A stretch of DNA of 62,943 bases, counting the filler, from Octopus bimaculoides (taxonomy: Eukaryota), in the NCBI RefSeq assembly GCF_001194135.2. It is 6 parts of 6 records of this genome, joined end to end, with 100 filler letters (N's around TTAATTAATTAA, not from the genome) between each part and the next. Parts side by side here need not be neighbours in the genome. Positions count along the whole stretch, not along the records: positions 48,953 to 56,466 come from NC_068984.1; 5 more parts are not named here. One strand, given 5' to 3'. Positions within the stretch are counted from its first letter, which is position 1, and each line of letters opens with the position of its first letter. The notes under the pieces are model-generated. The model saw only the letters and a program-made list of their open reading frames with translations, had not been told where the DNA came from and ran no database searches. The position numbers were made by a program, and so were the translations under genes. Shown here in pieces: positions 48,953 to 56,575 of the stretch.

Positions 48953-49296
48953 ATAGGATCGCGGTTTCGATTCCCAAACCGGGCGTTGTGAGTGTTTATT
49001 AAGCGAAAACACCAAAAGCTCCACGAGGCTCCGACAGGGGATGGTGGCGAACCCTGCTGTACTCTTCCACCACAACTTTCTCTCACTCTTACTTCCTATT
49101 TCTGTTATGTCTGTAATTCAAAGGGTCAGCCTTATCACACTGTGTCACGCTGAATATCCCCGAGAACTACGGTAAGGGTACACGTGTCTGTGGAGTGCTC
49201 AGCCACTTGCACGTTAATTTCACGAGCAAGCTGTTCCGTTGATCGGATCAACTGGAACCCTCGACGTCGTAAGCGACGGAGTGCCAACAACAACAA
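48953..49296 (+). mobile_element. tRNA-derived SINE, family D (tail shared with family C)
   Basis: GGTTTCGATTCCC B-box at the gap edge; tail GTCACGCTGAATATC...GACGGAGTGCCAACAACAAC matches reverse complement of 8242..8400. Confidence 0.75.
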
Positions 49297-49685
49297 TATT
49301 GATCATGAAAAAAAAGCAAAGTATGGTCATCTGATGGTGTAGTTAGTCGATCAGATATTTAACCAGTTGACTAAAAATAAAGAAGTGATATTGAACCAAT
49401 GTTTGTGTTATTATTGATGTAATGACCTTCCCAATGCATAACAAAATATAGTGTTGTTCTTGTTGTTCTTGTTGTTAAAATACAGATCAACATACTTATA
49501 TTTAGAGTTGTTCCAGCCATGACCATCCTGTCGTTTATGGCTGTAAAACTGCATTATTGTCTCTACCTTCCTTTTTAAAGATAATTGGAAGTAATTTGAG
49601 GAAGATTTGACAGTTATCTTTAGTTAGATTATTAAAAAATAATAAAAATTCTTAATTTTAAAAGTTTTCTCATTACTTTTTTTAG

Positions 49686-49773
49686 ATGACAAGGATATCA
49701 ACTAAGGTATTTGCAGTTTTTGGTATAATTGTAGCAATATTTTTGTTTCAATATGCAACATCAGTATTTCAAA
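49686..49773 (+). CDS. First coding exon of HtrL/YibB-family gene: short basic cytoplasmic tail plus type II signal anchor (MTRISTKVFAVFGIIVAIFLFQYATSVFQ)
   Basis: ATG at 49686 directly follows a pyrimidine-rich acceptor (ttctcattactttttttag). The 88-nt exon ends at a strong donor (A|gtaagt at 49774), phase 1. The leftover A plus gc of the next exon gives Ser in frame. Hydrophobic run VFAVFGIIVAIFLF follows R/K residues. Confidence 0.8.
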
Positions 49774-49840
49774 GTAAGTTATTTTATATTCTTTAATTTA
49801 CTTTATAATTTTACATTCAATTTTTAATTTTATTTCATCT

Positions 49841-49998
49841 CGGCATGGCTATGTGATAAGAAGTGTACATTCCAACCTCATGGTTCTGTGTTCACTCCCA
49901 GTGTGTGGCACCTTGGGCAAGTATCTTCTATTATAGCCTCGACCTGACCAAAACTTTGTGAGTGGATTTGGTTGACGGAAACTGAAAGAAGCCTATTT

Positions 49999-50040
<42 letters not shown>

Positions 50041-50280
50041 GTATGTGTGTGTGTGGTATGTGTGTGCGTGCATGTGTGTGTTTTTGTGTTTGTGTTGTCC
50101 ACCACTGTTTGACAACTGGTGTTAATGCTTACATCCCCATAACTCAGCAATTTTGCAAAAGAAACCAATAGAATAGGTACCAGAAATTTACTGGGGTTGA
50201 TTTGTTTGACTAAACCCTTCAAGGTGGTGCTCCAGCATGGCAGAAGTTCAATAACTGAAGCCAGAAAAAGGATAAAAGAA
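49841..50280 (+). mobile_element. tRNA-derived SINE, family A, in intron of the HtrL-like gene
   Basis: Aligns with 4521..4920. Confidence 0.8.
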
Positions 50281-50529
50281 ACCCAAATATTTCAATGTGT
50301 CATTGCTTGTTTCTCTGATAACCTGTAGCCTAGAATTAGAAAGAGAAATGAAATCATTTCGTTGGAGTTACAAACTCAATGTTCTGGATCATAATGCCTT
50401 TGAAAAAGCTTATGCCCCAAAATATAAACCAAGACTGAAATAAAATCTACAGTCAATAGGATTCAGTCCACATGCAGGATTCTAAGGGTTTTAATGCCAG
50501 GAAATAAAATCAGGCCGAAAGGAATATCA

Positions 50530-52182
50530 TTCTTTTATTCTTTTTCTTTTATTTGTTTCACTAATTTGACTGCAGCCATGCTGGAGCACTGCCTTTAGTC
50601 AAAAAATTCGACCTCAGGACTTATTCTTTGTAAGCCTAGTACTTATGCTATCGGTCTCTTTTGCTGACCTACTAAGTTATGGAGATGTAAACACCCCAAA
50701 ATCGGTTGTCAAGCAATGGTGGAAAAACACAGACACACAAACATATATATACAGGGGTTGGACAAAATAATGGAAACACCTAGCATCATAGCATCATAAT
50801 TTTGAAATATCTATAAAACCATCAAAAGCTTGTTTATTTTTATGTTTTTTGATTTTATATTAATGTTGCTTAATATGTTTTGCAAAAATTGATGATTCTT
50901 TTCAGATATCATCAGAAAAATGTAATTAAAATTCATTAAAATGACACATCTATCGGACTTTCAAAGAGGTCAAATTGTTGGTGCTTGTATGGCAGGTGCT
51001 AGCATAAGGAAAACAGTGGAAATGTTTGGTGTATCAAGAAGTACTGTCTCGAAAGTAATGACAACCTTTGAGAAAAAAGTGAAAAACCTCCTTGTCAAAA
51101 CAAAACTCTGGAAGAAAATCAAAACTTTCAGACTCTTATGCAAATTGTTAAAAAAGATCACAAAAGTACAGCTCCCAAAATTGCTGTAGAGCTTAACAAC
51201 CACCTCGAGAACCCATTTTCCACAAAAACTGTTCACCAGGAGCTGCACAAAGCCAAATTTCATGGGAGGGCTGCAATCAGAAAACCACTACTTTCAAAAA
51301 CAAAGTTGCACAGCATTTAGAGTGGAGTAAAAACCTACATAATTGGTCCCTAGAGCAGTGGAAGAATGTTATTTTCTCGGACGAGTCATCCTTTATCTTC
51401 TTTCCGACCACTGGCCAAGTATACATGTGGAGAAAGCCAAAACAAGCATTTGACCCAAACTGCTTTCTTCCAACTGTTAAACATGGAGAAGAATCTGTGA
51501 TGATCTGGGGGGGGGGTATGTCTTGGAAATCTGCGAGCCCAATGGTTTGCTTGCATGGCAGAATTAATAGTCAAGACTATTTAAGCATTTTATCTGATCA
51601 AATTCATCCTATGGTTGCGGAACTGTTTCCCGAGGGAAACACAATCTTTCAGGGTGATAATGCACCAATTCACAAAGATAAAGTTGTTACTGAATGGCAC
51701 AAGGAACATTCTAGTGAAGTTGAACATCTTATCTGGCCACCACAGTCCCCAGATTTCAGTATTATTGAACATTTATGGTGCATTTTAGAAAAATGAATAA
51801 GGAGTCGATATCATCCACCATCATCACTACAAGAACTAGACACTGTTTTAATTGAAGAATGGACAAAAATTCCTTTGGAAACGATTCAAACTTTGTACAA
51901 GGCCATACCTCAAAGAATTCAAGCTGTGATTACAGGTGGTCCTATTCCATACTGATATAAATTTGTTTGAAATTTTTTGGTGTTTCTATCATTTTGTCCA
52001 ACCCCTATATATATATATATATATATNNNNNNNNNNNNNNNNNNNNNNNNNNNNNNNNNNNNNNNNNNNNNNNNNNNNNNNNNNNNNNNNNNNNNNNNNN
52101 NNNNNNNNNNNNNNNNNNNNNNNNNNNNNNNNNNNNNNNNNNNNNNNNNNNNNNNNNNNNNNNNNNNNNNNNNNNNNNNNNN

Positions 52183-52231
<49 letters not shown>

Positions 52232-52245
52232 TAGATGTGCCACTC

Positions 52246-52277
<32 letters not shown>

Positions 52278-52358
52278 CAAGGTGCCACTCAGTGGAACTG
52301 AACCAAGATCCATGTGGTTGGGAAGCAAGCTTCTTATTACACAGCCACACCTGTGCCT
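50530..52358 (-). mobile_element. Family A SINE split by a Tc1-like insertion (pieces 50530..50751 and ~52240..52358)
   Basis: 3' half left of the Tc1 and 5' head right of it and the gap; insertion site is the SINE's internal TA tract. Confidence 0.75.
50752..52007 (+). mobile_element. Full-length (1256 bp) defective Tc1-like element with DD36E catalytic spacing
   Basis: 29-bp TIRs CAGGGGTTGGACAAAATAATGGAAACACC (26 of 29 match), TA flanks. Broken transposase 50941..51955 with FSDES (D 51380), FQGDNAPIH (D 51656), SPDFSIIEHLW (E 51767): 36 residues between D and E. Confidence 0.95.
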
Positions 52359-52760
52359 ATGTATATTTTCTTATGATCCTTGGAAAATTTCTAATGCGAC
52401 AATAAATTATATGAGATTTGTCTCAGGAAACTACTTGAATAGTACTTAAAACACAGGAAAAATTACATAAGCTCAAAGGTTGATGCAATCTTCAGAGAAA
52501 TCCAAGAAAATCCAAGAAAAATGTAACAGATTATTGGGTGTAAGCTGAATATGCACAAATTTAGAAAGATGTATATTAAACTGGTTATCTCTGACAAATA
52601 TGTTTGAAGGAAACATGTATAAATATTATTGGTATATCTACTTCAAAACTATTACCTGCAGAACTTTGATATGATGCAGTTACAAGCCTTGTGGAGTTGT
52701 TACCAATAGGAGGCAATATGGTTATGTAATTTATGTAGTTTTTAGACATTCTTTAGCAGG

Positions 52761-53060
52761 TCATCATCATCACCATCGTTATTTAACGTCTGTTGTCCAT
52801 GCTGGCATGGGTTGGACGGTTTGACCAGGGCTGGCCAGCTGGAGAGCTGCTCCAGGTTCCTGTCTGATTTGGCTTGGTTTTTATGGCTTAATGCCATCCC
52901 TAACACCAACCACTTTACAGAGTGTGCTTGGGTGTTTATATGTGGTATATTTTATGTATATTTTATATGGCACTGAGATGGCTGCTTTCTGTGTGACACT
53001 GGCACAAGTAATTTTTGCATGACACCAGCACGGGTACATCTTGTGCGGCGCCAGTATTCA
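52761..53060 (-). mobile_element. Retroposon 3' end (SINE/LINE tail with (GAT)n-type terminus)
   Basis: Minus strand ends CCAACCCATGCCAGCATGGACAACAGACGTTAAAT-(GAT)n-like; GC content is higher than flanks. Confidence 0.55.
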
Positions 53061-53346
53061 GTAATATATGTTATATCACCAACAATGGTGCTAAGGTTGG
53101 AAAATTTCTGGAAGTTTTCAGAAAGTAACAAATTTGAAGACAGAGACTATCACTACCCACGAGTATATACAGACACCATATACAGGAGTTGCGCAATGAT
53201 GCTGTCGAGTGGAAGGCCCCAAAATGGCACACATTCTCTCTTGATGACCCTATGAACTTGCTAGCATTCATTAGCACTTGTATCTACTAGTTGTTTGTAG
53301 ATAATGCTGGTAACACCTGTATCTGCAAGTTGTTTGCAAAAGAAAA

Positions 53347-53382
<36 letters not shown>

Positions 53383-53953
53383 ATGCATGTGTGTGTGTGT
53401 GTGCATGCATGTGTGTGTGTGTATGTGATAATGTCTCCTTATCTAACCTTATCTAACCATCATGTAATGATTGTAAATGAGCAATCTTTCTGTTATATCG
53501 CAATACTACACAGTGGTTGTGTGAGCATCTCATCCTCGTCGCCACTGTTATATCGCACGTGTGGATGATCTCTACTCAACTCTCACTTCCGACGACTCGA
53601 CTCTACCGAACTCGAAGTCTAGTCTACCATTGACTCCGTCTCACTCTTACGCTCTGCTCGATGCTTTTCGTCTAGCTATTTATACGTATTGGACTAGCAT
53701 ACTTATCGCCTGAGGGAGTCCACACAACACTTTCATGGTAAACATATCTAGTCATGGGAAAATATTATCTTACTTGGAAACAAGGAAAGGTGACAGGAAA
53801 GACATCTAACTCTAGAAAATCTGTCTCAACAAATTTTGATTTTACCAATGCAAACATACAAAAGGAAACTTCAAAGATGGTGACGATGGTGATGGTGATA
53901 GTGATGATAAATATCACACGTTTTATTAATTAATTATTTATATATCATTTCAG

Positions 53954-53991
53954 GCACTCTGTTCTCAAGCCCAAGTTCGATACAACCCAGG
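53954..53991 (+). CDS. Second coding exon (38 nt) of HtrL/YibB-family gene; Ser/Pro-rich stem (S)TLFSSPSSIQPR
   Basis: Acceptor tcatttcag at 53951-53953 and donor gtaaga at 53992. Phase 1 in and phase 0 out exactly bridge the flanking exons without stops. Confidence 0.7.
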
Positions 53992-54114
53992 GTAAGAACT
54001 TCATGAATTCCTTTTCAACATATCTAAGCAAGAAAAAGTATAAACACTTAAGATTATAGAAAATGTGAATATTATTGCATCGTTCCAAGTTTTCTCGATA
54101 TAAATATTAGTCTC

Positions 54115-54322
54115 AAATTTTGGCAGAAGGTCAGTAATTTTGGGTGTGAGAGTAAGTCAATTACACTAACTCCAGTGCTCAACTGGTTCTTATTTTATAG
54201 ACCCTGAAAGGACGAAGGGCAAAGTCAACCTCGATGGAATTTGAACTCAGGATATAAAAATGAATGAAAAGCTGCCAAATGTTTTGTTCAACAGGCCAAT
54301 GATTCTGCTAGCTCGCTGCCTT
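54115..54322 (-). mobile_element. tRNA-derived SINE, family E
   Basis: Minus head AAGGCAGCGAGCTAGCAGAATC, B-box GAGTTCAAATTCC; aligns with 58433..58645. Confidence 0.75.
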
Positions 54323-54409
54323 TTCTTGATATAAATATCAACTTTAAAGAATCTTTAGTATTACTTCCACTTGTTAACATCTTTTAAATGGGTAACATAT
54401 AACAGCTGA

Positions 54410-54528
54410 ATGGGTCAACTTTGCCTTACATCCTTTCGGGGTCGACAAATTAAGTAACAGTGAAACACTGAAGTCGATGTAATCAACAAATTCCCTTTCC
54501 CAAAATGGCTGCCCTCGTGGAAAAATTT
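54410..54528 (+). mobile_element. Family E SINE, 3' half
   Basis: Inverted copy of 54115..54235. Confidence 0.7.
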
Positions 54529-54571
<43 letters not shown>

Positions 54572-54581
54572 NNNNNNNNNN

Positions 54582-54615
<34 letters not shown>
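54527..54615. repeat. (TAG)n microsatellite with small gap
   Basis: Direct reading. Confidence 0.95.
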
Positions 54616-55103
54616 TTTTGTTGTTGTTGTTATCATCATAAATCTATTACATGCTACTTTAGCTAGCAGGGATATTATCTTGAAGTCTGGTGAGAACAGG
54701 TAACCTCAAATCTCAAGACTCTTTCTTAGGCTTTTTGCAGAATATACTACAGCACTTCTTTCTGTCTCAGTTCCAATATTCTTCAGCCTCTCAGGTGACT
54801 GCCAGATGTTGTGTACCGATTTTACAGTAATGACAAATCTTGGATTTCATGTAATAAATTTTGATAAAGGCCATGTATATTTGTCATGTAGATTTTCAAT
54901 TTTCATTTAGTCCAAAGGATTCACTCTGTTTCCTTTTTAATGCAGAGGTAGTCATATTTTTAAATATATATTTTGTGATTTTCAATGTTAGGAACATAAC
55001 ACTAAAATATAGATAATGTTTTCATATAATATCTTAATGCAATTATATTATTATACCATATATGTATAATTATATCTCATTGTATATATTATTTACTTAA
55101 CAG

Positions 55104-55967
55104 GATAATCTATCTTCAACTGAGAAAGCCTTTTCTTCTATTCAAAGTAACCTTTCAATAAACACTGCAAAACTTACCAATGACATCACAGTATTGACTG
55201 CATATTTCAATATCGGAGCCTTTGCAAAGGGATCTTTGGGGAATATATTTACACCTAGTAAGTATTACGAATGGATGTCTGCATATGGTAAGATGCTCAA
55301 TAATCTAGTTGTTTATACAGATGATGAACGTACATACAAAACTTTTCAGAAGTTAAGGGGGAATGCTTTCAAAGAACAAACCAAGTTATTTTTTATAAAC
55401 AAGACGGAATTGTTATCATTTCAGATAGAAAAAAATATTTCTGATATATTTAAACAACCTGGTTACCCAAAGCATCTTCCCAATACTGTTGTTCCTGAGT
55501 ACTCTTGTGCCATGCATGCGAAATATGAATTGCTTAACCGAATCATAAGAAAGAACTTTTTTCACACTAAATACTTTATGTGGTCAGATGCTGGATTATT
55601 CCGGACACCCCAAAATTCTTTATTTAAATTGGCATTACCTAAAAATTTTGATGATACAAAAGTTGCTCTCAGCCGAGTGTTTGATTTTAATGAGAACTCA
55701 ACATATAAAGACATTATTTATAATAATAATGTGTGGCTTGCAGGTGGCTGCAGTCTTGGTAAATATGATGTTTTGTACAAATTTACTCAAGAATATTTCA
55801 ATTTTCTTCATAAATCTTTATCCATGAAACTAGTAAGTACGGATCAGCAAATTATATATGGGATGTATGTGGACAAACAAAAGCCTGTGACATATCTCCA
55901 ACTTTATGAATCAGGTTGGTATGCATTAAGCAATGCATGTTATGAAGCAGGAAAGGCACTAATTTGA
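55104..55967 (+). CDS. htrL: Terminal coding exon: HtrL/YibB-family (htrL-like) putative glycosyltransferase domain, 287 aa; full protein 329 aa
   Basis: Acceptor ttacttaacag at 55101-55103, phase 0, open to TGA at 55965-55967; contains ORF-track 55194..55967. Motifs I recognise from HtrL/YibB proteins, in the expected order: ITVLTAYFNIG, LVVYTDD, P-x-Y...K, YFMWSDAGLFR, WLAGG-x-x-x-G, TDQQII. Family call is from motif recall, not an HMM run; the symbol denotes family homology, not orthology. Confidence 0.85.
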   Translation, partial: DNLSSTEKAFSSIQSNLSINTAKLTNDITVLTAYFNIGAFAKGSLGNIFTPSKYYEWMSAYGKMLNNLVVYTDDERTYKTFQKLRGNAFKEQTKLFFINKTELLSFQIEKNISDIFKQPGYPKHLPNTVVPEYSCAMHAKYELLNRIIRKNFFHTKYFMWSDAGLFRTPQNSLFKLALPKNFDDTKVALSRVFDFNENSTYKDIIYNNNVWLAGGCSLGKYDVLYKFTQEYFNFLHKSLSMKLVSTDQQIIYGMYVDKQKPVTYLQLYESGWYALSNACYEAGKALI

Positions 55968-56220
55968 TTAATTAGTATCTTCCCTGCTTCAAAAATATGA
56001 ATGTTGTAAAACAATGGACAAAAGAATGTTTGGAATCATCACTTTATTGAGAAGCATTTCACCTTATTATGATAACATAAATATTTTTCCTTAACTTTCC
56101 TTTCTTGCATTCATTTTGTTTCGTATTTAACTACACACACACAACAAACACACATGTATATAGACATACACGCATACATATCTTTCTTCCAACTAACATG
56201 GAATGTATACGTATAATAGC

Positions 56221-56252
<32 letters not shown>

Positions 56253-56575
56253 GTATAAAAGATAATAAGAGTGAAAAAACTACAGAAGGCTTGTGTTACT
56301 TGGTTAAAGTATATATTTAAATTATGTCAGAAAAATGTTAGAAAAATGTTAGAAAAATTTTAGAAAATCTTTTTGGTATATAAACATTGTATTTTGAGAA
56401 ATAACCGGTTTCGTGTTGTCTTTTCAAATTTCTCTACTTCATTGTGTCGTGTTCACTCGAGTGTATNNNNNNNNNNNNNNNNNNNNNNNNNNNNNNNNNN
56501 NNNNNNNNNNTTAATTAATTAANNNNNNNNNNNNNNNNNNNNNNNNNNNNNNNNNNNNNNNNNNNNATATATATA

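What the first reader, a model, noticed from the sequence alone, without database searches (positions are those of the whole stretch)
49686..55967. Bacterial LPS-locus protein family (HtrL/YibB) apparently domesticated as a Golgi-type membrane enzyme in an octopus-like genome
Seen: three phase-compatible exons give a 329-aa protein with a short basic tail, one TM helix, a Ser-rich stem and a catalytic-looking domain. It has five N-glycosylation sequons (NLS, NLS, NKT, NIS, NST), a YTDD acidic motif and no disabling mutations, although nearly everything around it is decayed. Established: the HtrL/YibB family is mainly bacterial; E. coli htrL lies beside the rfa/waa LPS-core genes and the family is regarded as a putative glycosyltransferase; tail-TM-stem-catalytic is the topology of Golgi glycosyltransferases. 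Inference: an ancient horizontal acquisition, or a patchily retained gene, now makes an uncharacterised animal glycan modification (for example on mucus, skin, egg coat or haemocyanin glycans). HtrL-like annotations exist in some invertebrates as far as I recall, but I know of no assigned function.
Basis: partly seen in the sequence, partly recalled or inferred. Interest (0 to 1): 0.8.

Follow-up and report, generated by a model that had tools for sequence, protein, structure and literature searches.

The report
Octopus HtrL-like Golgi-type glycosyltransferase gene
This is an intact three-coding-exon octopus gene for a membrane-anchored enzyme of the little-studied HtrL/YibB family, but it is one ordinary copy of a gene family found in at least five animal phyla, not a bacterial gene captured by octopuses.

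Summary
Exons 49686-49773, 53954-53991 and 55104-55967 join in frame to a 329-aa protein. It has a basic tail, one N-terminal membrane helix, a Ser-rich stem, five N-glycosylation sequons and a Pfam HtrL_YibB domain (56.8 bits; cut-off 24.1). Both assembly gaps lie in introns, inside microsatellites, and touch no exon.

The exon layout, intron phases and splice-site sequences match two annotated octopus paralogs. The likely ortholog (best hit) is the annotated O. sinensis LOC115210785, 88.5% identical over exon 3.

AlphaFold (pLDDT 90.3) gives a GT-A glycosyltransferase fold. The nearest solved structures are retaining GT6 enzymes, at only TM 0.4-0.55. No family member has a solved structure or a known reaction.

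The interpretation needs correcting. This is not an octopus-level domestication. The animal branch occurs in molluscs, annelids, brachiopods, nematodes and cnidarians, often in many copies. Bacterial and phage members are far away (51-72 bits against the animal profile, versus at least 255 bits for the 150 best-scoring clusters). Any transfer must be very old, and neither its direction nor its occurrence could be tested here.

Verdict: a real, probably functional gene; a new member of a known but uncharacterised family; moderate to low interest as a single locus.

The parts
49666..49685 (+). Polypyrimidine tract plus AG directly upstream of the start codon. This is a probable 3' splice site, implying at least one non-coding 5' exon further upstream.
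   Evidence: Seen in the sequence. The same T-rich tract plus AG lies 0-8 nt before the ATG in both paralog loci. That it is a splice site is inferred, not shown.
49686..49773 (+). Coding exon 1 (88 nt, ends in phase 1). It encodes the basic cytosolic tail (MTRISTK) and the signal-anchor helix; the TM core is about 49707-49769.
   Evidence: ATG and gtaagt donor. Donor site and phase are identical in the paralogs. Kyte-Doolittle maximum 2.1. AlphaFold helix at residues 2-32.
49774..53953 (+). Intron 1 (4180 nt as assembled). It contains assembly gap 52027-52182, SINE-like repeats, microsatellites and a decayed Tc1/mariner element.
53954..53991 (+). Coding exon 2 (38 nt), the first part of the Ser-rich stem (S TLFSSPSSIQPR).
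   Evidence: AG/GT boundaries. The exon and about 40 nt of each flank align with exon 2 of the two paralogs, and the length differences are multiples of 3.
53992..55103 (+). Intron 2 (phase 0). It contains the 10-N gap 54572-54581 inside a (TAG)n microsatellite.
55104..55967 (+). Coding exon 3 (864 nt including the TGA stop). It encodes the rest of the stem and the whole HtrL_YibB / GT-A catalytic domain (residues about 67-324, 55176-55949).
   Evidence: 88.5% amino-acid identity to O. sinensis LOC115210785 over 287 residues.
55314..55325 (+). YTDD (residues 113-116), an acidic motif at the end of strand beta-2. It is the proposed nucleotide base/ribose contact.
   Evidence: Strand at residues 109-114 in the model. 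Y113 is at least 90% conserved. E. coli has FTSPD at this place. The role is inferred.
55581..55595 (+). WSDAG (residues 202-206). W202, D204 and G206 are invariant in the 9-sequence alignment of animal, bacterial and phage members (A5). The motif sits where GT-A enzymes carry DXD.
   Evidence: Strand at residues 197-203. The role is inferred.
55839..55850 (+). TDQQ (residues 288-291), a conserved acidic/amide motif at the start of a C-terminal helix. It is a candidate catalytic or acceptor-side residue set.
   Evidence: D289 and Q290 are conserved in animals and bacteria (DDDQG in E. coli); phages have N-E-Q or T-E-E. The role is inferred.

Best explanation
The locus is an intact nuclear gene of an octopod, though not O. 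sinensis or O. vulgaris. It belongs to the animal branch of the HtrL_YibB family (Pfam PF09612).

Two short 5' coding exons supply a cytosolic basic tail, a signal-anchor helix and a Ser-rich stem that is probably glycosylated. One large exon encodes a luminal GT-A-fold domain.

The most likely mechanism is a Golgi-resident type II glycosyltransferase that moves a sugar from a nucleotide-sugar donor to a glycan acceptor.
- The nucleotide would be held by the beta-1 loop (TAYFNIG) and the acidic end of beta-2 (YTDD).
- The diphosphate would be handled at the DXD-equivalent position by the single invariant Asp of WSDAG.
- This may be helped by K182, which is invariant, and R209, which is nearly invariant, instead of or in addition to a metal.
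- The nearest solved folds are retaining enzymes (GT6, GT8, GT15), so a retaining reaction is slightly favoured.
- Donor, acceptor and product are unknown.

Evolution: the gene is one of several cephalopod paralogs of a family present in Mollusca, Annelida, Brachiopoda, Nematoda and Cnidaria. The fusion of a signal-anchor exon to an intronless catalytic exon is shared with an annelid and is therefore old.

Shown: gene structure, family membership, fold class, conservation and taxonomic spread.
Inferred: Golgi location, transferase activity, roles of the motifs and expression.

The stated confidence (0.65) is for the whole statement including the inferred transferase mechanism; for the shown parts alone (real intact gene, PF09612 member, GT-A fold, wide animal distribution) it is about 0.95.
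For: Gene model and frame. Conservation of the model in paralogs.

Family membership:
- Pfam 56.8 bits against a cut-off of 24.1.
- hhalign against E. coli HtrL: probability 98.5%, collinear over 242 columns.
- BLASTP E 4e-7.

Likely ortholog (best hit) and paralogs.

Constraint:
- dN/dS of 0.42-0.46 against the paralogs.
- Every residue shared by animal and bacterial members is retained.

Fold:
- AlphaFold pLDDT 90.3, pTM 0.83.
- Foldseek against PDB gave 139 hits at E<=1e-3. The 50 listed were GT-A enzymes: BoGT6a, alpha3GalT, blood-group GTA/GTB, Ktr4p and LARGE1.
- Giant-virus proteins, some named glycosyltransferase, match at TM about 0.6.

Topology:
- One hydrophobic segment at residues 4-22 and a disordered stem.
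- 73 of 137 animal homologs that look full-length have an N-terminal hydrophobic 19-mer, with a median stem of 45 aa.
- E. coli HtrL starts directly at the catalytic domain.

Taxonomic spread; PMC8989417 (C. elegans HTRL-1); PMC6214176 (corals).

Exon structure elsewhere: the catalytic domain is a single exon in Helobdella and Exaiptasia too, and Helobdella has a separate TM exon.

Bacterial context: E. coli htrL lies beside rfaD-waaF-waaC-waaL. An Acinetobacter member sits in the LOS outer-core locus OCL5 (PMC4172580). The phage B23 homolog lies two genes upstream of a GT25 gene.
Against: - No member of the family, bacterial or animal, has a demonstrated reaction (literature searches).
- No solved structure exists for the family.
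- Similarity to solved GT-A enzymes is only at fold level (TM 0.33-0.55, 9-14% identity).
- There is no canonical DXD, only one Asp in W-x-D-x-G.
- This orthologous pair departs from the animal consensus at four positions conserved in at least 85% of members, plus WLDIG to WSDAG.
- No transcript evidence exists for this species. The O. sinensis RefSeq isoforms carry extra cassette exons that are absent here.
- dN/dS of about 0.4 is only moderate constraint.
- The one published animal member, C. elegans HTRL-1, was described as a secreted, possibly antimicrobial protein, not as a Golgi enzyme (PMC8989417).
Confidence: 0.65

Rival explanations
1. Ancient horizontal transfer: a bacterial, phage or giant-virus HtrL-like gene entered an early animal lineage once or a few times. 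It gained a signal-anchor exon and then diversified. The octopus gene is a descendant of that event. (This concerns origin only and is compatible with the best explanation's mechanism.)
For: - The family is abundant in bacteria (LPS/LOS loci), jumbo phages and giant viruses.
- Among named hits only some animal phyla appear; no vertebrate or arthropod was seen in the lists.
- The catalytic domain is intronless in octopus, leech and sea anemone, and the membrane anchor sits on a separate 5' exon.
- Bacterial proteins lack the anchor.
Against: - No non-animal sequence close to the animal branch was found: 51-72 bits for the bacterial and phage members tested against at least 255 bits for the 150 best-scoring clusters.
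- Presence in Cnidaria, Spiralia and Nematoda fits vertical descent from an early metazoan with later losses equally well.
- Single-exon catalytic domains are common in undisputed old Golgi glycosyltransferase genes (established knowledge).
- Other eukaryotes were not sampled.
Confidence: 0.4
2. The protein is not a glycosyltransferase. It uses the HtrL fold to bind or modify microbial glycolipid, or another substrate, as a secreted or membrane immune effector. Alternatively it transfers a non-sugar group such as a phospho-substituent.
For: - C. elegans HTRL-1 carries this domain, is expressed throughout the pharynx and was grouped with antimicrobial effectors (PMC8989417).
- A peptide resembling an HtrL_YibB protein was reported in snail mucus (PMC11206429; weak match, 63% identity, E 4e-4).
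- There is no canonical DXD.
- All sugar linkages of the E. coli K-12 core are credited to other Waa enzymes (my own knowledge, not checked here).
Against: - The fold hits listed are nucleotide-sugar transferases.
- The residues conserved from phages to animals (Y175, K182, W202, D204, G206) cluster at the GT-A donor-site positions.
- The type II anchor with a stem is the standard Golgi enzyme layout.
Confidence: 0.2
3. The copy in this window is a young pseudogene or a relaxed duplicate that merely still has an open frame.
For: - It sits among decayed repeats.
- It shows moderate dN/dS (0.42-0.46).
- It departs from consensus at W146L, L203S, F315Y and G318S.
- The stem is shorter than in the paralogs.
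- No product at 90% identity or more is present in the 5.8-billion-protein collection.
Against: - 329 codons are open across three exons with all four internal splice sites canonical.
- All the departures from consensus are shared with the O. sinensis ortholog, which is 88.5% identical. They therefore predate the species split and have been maintained.
- Every family-wide invariant residue is present.
Confidence: 0.08
4. Bacterial contamination or a very recent transfer into this genome.
For: The Pfam family is titled 'Bacterial protein of unknown function'.
Against: - The gene has spliceosomal introns with GT-AG boundaries.
- Octopus SINE-like and Tc1/mariner repeats lie inside the introns.
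- GC content is 33-36%, the same as the flanks.
- An ortholog and paralogs with the same exon structure exist on chromosome-scale octopus assemblies.
- Identity to E. coli HtrL is only 21%.
Confidence: 0.01

Closest known systems
Octopus sinensis LOC115210785 (RefSeq 'uncharacterized protein', isoforms X2 and X3; P0001, P0002)
   Same: Likely ortholog (best hit). It is 88.5% identical over the 287 residues of the last exon. It has the same tail-TM start and the same exon 3 start (DNL...). It shares the departures from the family consensus (WSD[AI]G, L146, Y315, S318).
   Different: - Exon 1 is only about 42% identical.
- The RefSeq isoforms insert one or two 40-aa cassette exons carrying a pyruvate-kinase fragment (PF00224). 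Isoform X2 starts in a SINE-derived exon. Neither is found in the read sequence of this window.
- Only three of the five sequons are shared (read).
Octopod paralogs O. sinensis LOC115210944 and O. bimaculoides LOC106877989
   Same: They have the same three coding exons, intron phases and splice-site sequences. They are 65-66% identical and have the same type II layout.
   Different: - Their stems are about 25-30 aa longer.
- They keep the consensus WLD[IV]G and WF.L motifs.
- The loci are different.
E. coli HtrL/YibB (b3618) and bacterial or phage HtrL_YibB proteins
   Same: The domain is the same and collinear end to end. They share TAYF(D/N)IG, (Y/F)T..D, PEY, an invariant Lys, W-x-D-x-G and DQ motifs. 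Their function is unknown too.
   Different: - Identity is 21%.
- The window protein scores far below the NCBIfam equivalog cut-off (66.7 against 264.9 bits).
- The bacterial proteins have no N-terminal anchor or stem, so they are presumably cytoplasmic.
- They are encoded in LPS/LOS loci (PMC4172580).
GT6 retaining glycosyltransferases (Bacteroides ovatus BoGT6a, bovine alpha-1,3-GalT, human blood-group GTA/GTB)
   Same: These are the best solved-structure matches. They have the GT-A fold, and the animal members are type II Golgi proteins. BoGT6a is titled metal-independent in its PDB entry; that it lacks a canonical DXD motif is my recollection, not checked here.
   Different: Similarity is only at fold level (TM 0.33-0.55, rmsd 7-9 A, 10-14% identity). 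There is no Pfam or sequence match to GT6. The gene is not a member of GT6.
C. elegans HTRL-1 (T11F9.12)
   Same: It is the only animal PF09612 protein discussed in the searchable literature (PMC8989417).
   Different: It is reported as 736 aa, secreted, nematode-specific in architecture, expressed throughout the pharynx and discussed as an immune effector. Its sequence was not compared here. The paper's statement that the domain is otherwise only bacterial is contradicted.

Membership tests
Pfam PF09612 HtrL_YibB | Whole-protein score above the curated gathering threshold | tested here: met
   56.8 bits against a cut-off of 24.1, E 3.5e-15, profile positions 2-246 of 267.
Pfam PF09612 HtrL_YibB | Collinear, near full-length homology to the founding member, E. 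coli HtrL | tested here: met
   hhalign probability 98.5%, E 3.7e-15, 242 columns. BLASTP 21% identity, E 4e-7.
Pfam PF09612 HtrL_YibB | Family-wide invariant residues (Y96, P168, Y175, K182, W202, D204, G206 in window numbering) | tested here: met
   All are present in the window protein. They are invariant across animal, bacterial and phage sequences.
NCBIfam TIGR02192 / NF008462 'protein YibB' (equivalog, i.e. same function as E. coli YibB) | Score above the equivalog cut-off | tested here: not met
   66.7 bits against 264.9, and 50.7 against 342. It is a homolog, not an equivalog.
GT-A fold nucleotide-sugar glycosyltransferases | Rossmann-like alpha/beta/alpha sandwich resembling solved GT-A enzymes | tested here: met
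   The model has pLDDT 90.3. There are 139 PDB matches at E<=1e-3, and the 50 listed are GT-A enzymes with probability 1.00, but TM is only 0.33-0.55.
GT-A fold nucleotide-sugar glycosyltransferases | DXD (or variant) metal/diphosphate motif after the fourth strand | tested here: inconclusive
   Only one acidic residue is present (W-S-D204-A-G) at the end of strand 197-203. Some GT-A enzymes do without DXD.
GT-A fold nucleotide-sugar glycosyltransferases | Demonstrated sugar transfer from a nucleotide sugar | not testable with these tools
   The literature searched reports no assay for any family member.
Golgi type II membrane glycosyltransferases (topology class) | Short cytosolic N-tail with basic residues, a single N-terminal signal anchor, a flexible stem and a luminal catalytic domain with sequons | tested here: met
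   Tail MTRISTK. Hydrophobic residues 4-22/8-28 (Kyte-Doolittle 2.1). Stem pLDDT 44-61. Five sequons. 73 of 137 homologs have the same layout.
Golgi type II membrane glycosyltransferases (topology class) | Golgi localisation | not testable with these tools
   This needs tagged expression.
CAZy GT6 | Sequence membership (Glyco_transf_6 profile; conserved GT6 catalytic residues) | tested here: not met
   No Pfam hit other than HtrL_YibB at E<=1. No sequence hit to any PDB chain. 10-14% identity in the structural alignments.

The most novel reading that the evidence does not exclude
The animal HtrL-like proteins are a so far unclassified family of Golgi GT-A glycosyltransferases. They derive from an ancient transfer from a bacterium or a large DNA virus into an early animal. 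They were retained and expanded in cnidarians, spiralians and nematodes, possibly lost elsewhere, and they build lineage-specific glycan epitopes. Working out one member would also give E. coli HtrL its first function.
Probability: 0.3. Interest if true: 0.55.

Novelty: new member of a known kind. Interest (0 to 1): 0.3.

Why it matters
HtrL/YibB is an orphan family. It is common in LPS and LOS gene clusters and occurs in jumbo phages and giant viruses. As shown here, it is also widespread and multi-copy in at least five animal phyla as a type II membrane protein. In the literature and structure databases searched here, no member has a known reaction or a solved structure.

The only paper that discusses an animal member states that the domain is otherwise purely bacterial, so the animal distribution is under-appreciated. 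A confident AlphaFold model now points to a GT-A nucleotide-sugar transferase with an unusual single-Asp motif, which makes the activity directly testable.

This particular locus adds little beyond that. It is one octopod paralog with an already annotated likely ortholog (best hit).

Tried and rejected
1. O. sinensis orthologous locus. I tried to fetch it for a nucleotide-level exon comparison and a branch-specific dN/dS. Isoforms X3 and X2 are not on record as gene products, so I used paralog loci instead.
2. Transcript contigs for the window's own protein. No cluster at 90% identity or more exists in the protein collection.
3. Viral relatives by pattern scan of IMG/VR with the animal profile found none. 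A mixed animal/bacterial/phage alignment was too divergent to seed a scan. PHROGs gave no hit.
4. Solved structures by sequence, with a single protein and with a profile: nothing real. Two chance hits to HMG-CoA reductase at E above 1.
5. The third homolog search, with a profile of divergent animal members, was swamped by more than 90 near-identical oyster transcript variants and added no new phylum.
6. The bacterial genome scan with E. coli HtrL returned only close relatives (Enterobacteriaceae, Acinetobacter, one Bacteroides). It did not sample the bacterial diversity needed for a rooted tree.
7. The Holden et al. 2012 paper on C. jejuni WlaTC is not held. My recollection that InterPro names this family 'WlaTC/HtrL glycosyltransferase' is unverified.
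8. tRNA and Rfam scans of the piece found nothing.
9. Contamination and recent transfer were considered and rejected (see the rival explanations).

Full report
**1. What is in the sequence**

The piece spans 48953-56466, has 35.5% GC and contains 166 N. One long open frame stands out against a background of repeats.

Joining 49686-49773, 53954-53991 and 55104-55967 gives 990 nt and a 329-aa protein with no internal stop.
- All four internal splice sites are canonical: TTTCAAA|gtaagt, tttcag|GCACTC, CCCAGG|gtaaga and ttaacag|GATAAT.
- The frame of the last exon opens at 55101, directly after a TAA that is part of the acceptor. It runs 288 codons.
- At the local stop-codon frequency of 0.0525, that has a chance probability of about 2e-7.
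- The next longest ORFs free of N in the piece are 123 and 114 aa.

**2. The assembly gaps**

Both gaps are intronic and sit inside microsatellites.
- Gap 52027-52182 lies in intron 1, between the (TA)n run that flanks a Tc1/mariner element and an (AG)n run.
- Gap 54572-54581 lies in intron 2, inside a (TAG)n run.

No exon abuts a gap. The reading frame is set by the splice sites, not by continuity across the gaps. The one thing that cannot be excluded is a small cassette exon hidden in the 156-N gap.

**3. Is the exon model right?**

I could not get RNA data for this species, nor the O. sinensis orthologous locus. I used two annotated paralog loci instead: O. sinensis LOC115210944 (L001) and O. 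bimaculoides LOC106877989 (L002).

Mapping their proteins back to the DNA shows the same three coding exons.
- An 85-nt first exon ends in phase 1 at the same TTTCAAA|GTGAGT site.
- A small second exon is 50 nt in one paralog and 62 nt in the other, against 38 nt here. The differences of 12 and 24 nt preserve the frame.
- One large last exon follows aacag|G.

Exon 2 and about 40 nt of intron on each side align between the window and both paralogs. Exon 1 and its flanks align too.

One refinement: in all three genes a polypyrimidine tract plus AG lies 0-8 nt before the ATG. This suggests a non-coding 5' exon further upstream.

**4. Family**

- Pfam gives a single hit, HtrL_YibB (PF09612): 56.8 bits against a cut-off of 24.1, covering residues 69-300.
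- NCBIfam's YibB equivalog models match far below their cut-offs (66.7 against 264.9 bits). The protein is a homolog of E. coli YibB, not a functional equivalent.
- I took E. coli htrL from MG1655, where it lies next to rfaD-waaF-waaC-waaL.
- BLASTP against the window protein gives 21% identity, E 4e-7. A profile of 25 animal members aligns to it collinearly, with 98.5% probability.

**5. Relatives**

The best hit is O. sinensis LOC115210785 (RefSeq 'uncharacterized protein'), 88.5% identical over the last exon.
- The window therefore comes from another octopod.
- Its SINE-like repeats are 91% identical to copies in O. sinensis.
- The O. sinensis isoforms carry extra 40-aa cassette exons with a pyruvate-kinase fragment, and isoform X2 has a SINE-derived first exon. 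Neither is present in the read sequence here.
- Other cephalopod paralogs are 58-72% identical.

Named relatives come from many animal groups:
- Gastropods: Haliotis, Patella, Littorina, Pomacea, Lymnaea, Nucella, Batillaria, Babylonia, Gigantopelta.
- Bivalves: oysters, scallops, Mytilus, Mercenaria.
- A chiton: Liolophura.
- Annelids: Helobdella, Capitella, Paralvinella.
- A brachiopod: Lingula.
- A nematode: Soboliphyme.
- A sea anemone: Exaiptasia.

The literature adds C. elegans HTRL-1 (PMC8989417) and corals (PMC6214176).

An exhaustive profile search of 1.84 billion cluster representatives found 3136 clusters at E<=1e-3 and 285 at E<=1e-30. The best 150 all score at least 255 bits. The bacterial and phage members I could retrieve score only 51-72 bits against the same profile. 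The animal branch is thus large, old and well separated from them.

**6. Constraint**

- dN/dS over the last exon against the two paralogs is 0.42 and 0.46.
- The protein keeps every residue shared by animals and bacteria.
- It also keeps every residue invariant across animals, bacteria and phages: Y96, P168, Y175, K182, W202, D204 and G206.
- It departs from the animal consensus at four positions conserved in at least 85% of members (V73L, W146L, F315Y, G318S), and WLDIG is replaced by WSDAG.
- All these departures are shared with the O. sinensis ortholog, so they are maintained rather than signs of recent decay.

**7. Structure and likely mechanism**

AlphaFold, run with the 25-sequence alignment, gives pLDDT 90.3 and pTM 0.83. 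The model has an N-terminal helix (residues 2-32), a disordered stem (33-42) and an alpha/beta domain.

Foldseek against the PDB returns GT-A glycosyltransferases in all 50 listed matches.
- The best are the retaining GT6 enzymes BoGT6a (titled metal-independent in its PDB entry), alpha-1,3-GalT and blood-group GTA/GTB.
- Ktr4p (GT15) and LARGE1 follow.
- The scores are modest: TM 0.33-0.55 and 9-14% identity.
- No PDB sequence matches by sequence search.

In the viral structure library the closest are giant-virus proteins from Bodo saltans virus, Pithovirus-like viruses, Solumvirus and an iridovirus, at E 1e-14 to 1e-11 and TM about 0.6. A few jumbo phages have homologs at 22-27% identity. 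One of them lies two genes upstream of a GT25 gene.

Reading the conserved motifs on the model's secondary structure:
- TAYFNIG follows strand beta-1.
- YTDD ends strand beta-2.
- WSDAG ends the strand where GT-A enzymes carry DXD.

I therefore infer that D204 is the DXD-equivalent residue and that YTDD contacts the nucleotide. The invariant K182 and the nearly invariant R209 may take over part of the metal's role. This is inference; I had no access to the model coordinates.

**8. Topology**

- The tail MTRISTK, a single hydrophobic segment (Kyte-Doolittle maximum 2.1 at residues 4-22), a stem with 11 Ser in 38 residues and five sequons are all confirmed.
- Three of the five sequons (N58, N141, N153) are shared with the O. 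sinensis ortholog (read).
- Of 137 animal homologs with at least 35 residues before the domain, 73 have an N-terminal hydrophobic 19-mer. The median start is residue 12 and the median stem is 45 aa.
- E. coli HtrL begins directly at the catalytic domain.
- In the leech the anchor is also on its own exon. In leech and sea anemone the catalytic domain is a single exon.

**9. Evolutionary reading**

The data rule out contamination and recent transfer. The gene has introns with host repeats inside them, host-like GC content, and an ortholog and paralogs on chromosome-scale assemblies.

The data also rule out a domestication specific to octopuses. They do not decide between an ancient transfer into an early animal and vertical descent with losses.
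- An intronless catalytic exon with a separate anchor exon fits a transfer. It is also common among old Golgi enzyme genes.

**10. Comparison with what is known, and verdict**

The gene is a member of PF09612 and of the GT-A fold class. It is not a GT6 member and not a YibB equivalog.

No function is known for any member. The Acinetobacter and E. coli members are noted only as LPS/LOS-locus genes (PMC4172580).

The locus is a new member of a known but uncharacterised family. The family is a reasonable target for enzymology, but this single locus is of modest interest.

Noticed in passing
window 50743-52016 (intron 1): A decayed Tc1/mariner transposon. It has 38-nt inverted arms including the TA-rich flank (50743-50780 and 51979-52016, 92% complementary). 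The transposase is broken into ORFs that hit HTH_23, HTH_Tnp_Tc3_2 and DDE_3. It is inserted in a (TA)n tract and abuts assembly gap 52027-52182.
   Followed up: yes
window 48953-49285; 49846-49916 and 52277-52347: SINE-like interspersed repeats. The first is 91% identical to a copy in the O. sinensis paralog locus (L001 6146-6480). The other two form an inverted pair that is 79% complementary. ARAGORN and Rfam find nothing in the piece.
   Followed up: partly
window 49880-49918, compared with O. sinensis isoform X2 (P0002) residues 1-13: The N-terminus of RefSeq isoform X2 (MVLCSLLVCDTLG) matches the SINE copy in intron 1 of the window at 85%. That isoform's first exon therefore looks repeat-derived and lacks the membrane anchor.
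   Followed up: partly
O. sinensis LOC115210785 isoforms (P0001 residues about 42-81; twice in P0002): A 40-aa in-frame cassette (YHGETIKNV...KGPEIRTGLLKG) carries a Pfam pyruvate-kinase (PF00224) hit. It looks like an exonised gene fragment and is duplicated in isoform X2. No counterpart exists in the read sequence of the window.
   Followed up: partly
Literature: PMC8989417 (eLife 2022): The paper states that the HtrL domain is found, outside nematodes, only in the bacterial protein HtrL. The searches here show it in molluscs, annelids, a brachiopod and cnidarians as well.
   Followed up: yes
One search hit list (P0271-P0372; Magallana/Crassostrea gigas LOC105342359): More than 90 separate 90%-identity clusters of a 377-aa oyster HtrL-like protein come from transcriptome assemblies. 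This implies either extreme polymorphism or many near-identical copies of this gene in oysters.
   Followed up: no
L023 (Synechococcus phage B23) 1492-2298; L024 (Xanthomonas phage XacN1) 1489-3129: Jumbo-phage HtrL-like genes are annotated only as hypothetical. B23 gp357 lies two genes upstream of a GT25 glycosyltransferase. XacN1 ORF330 fuses the domain to a C-terminal extension of about 275 aa. Both carry W-[VI]-D-A-G, like the window's WSDAG.
   Followed up: partly
L020-L022 (Logan contigs from SRR8281672, SRR8281665, SRR25158145): A 331-aa relative (P0008), 58% identical to the window protein, is encoded without interruption on contigs of about 2 kb with about 1 kb upstream of the ORF. 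These are probably spliced transcripts of a cephalopod. The organism was not identified.
   Followed up: no
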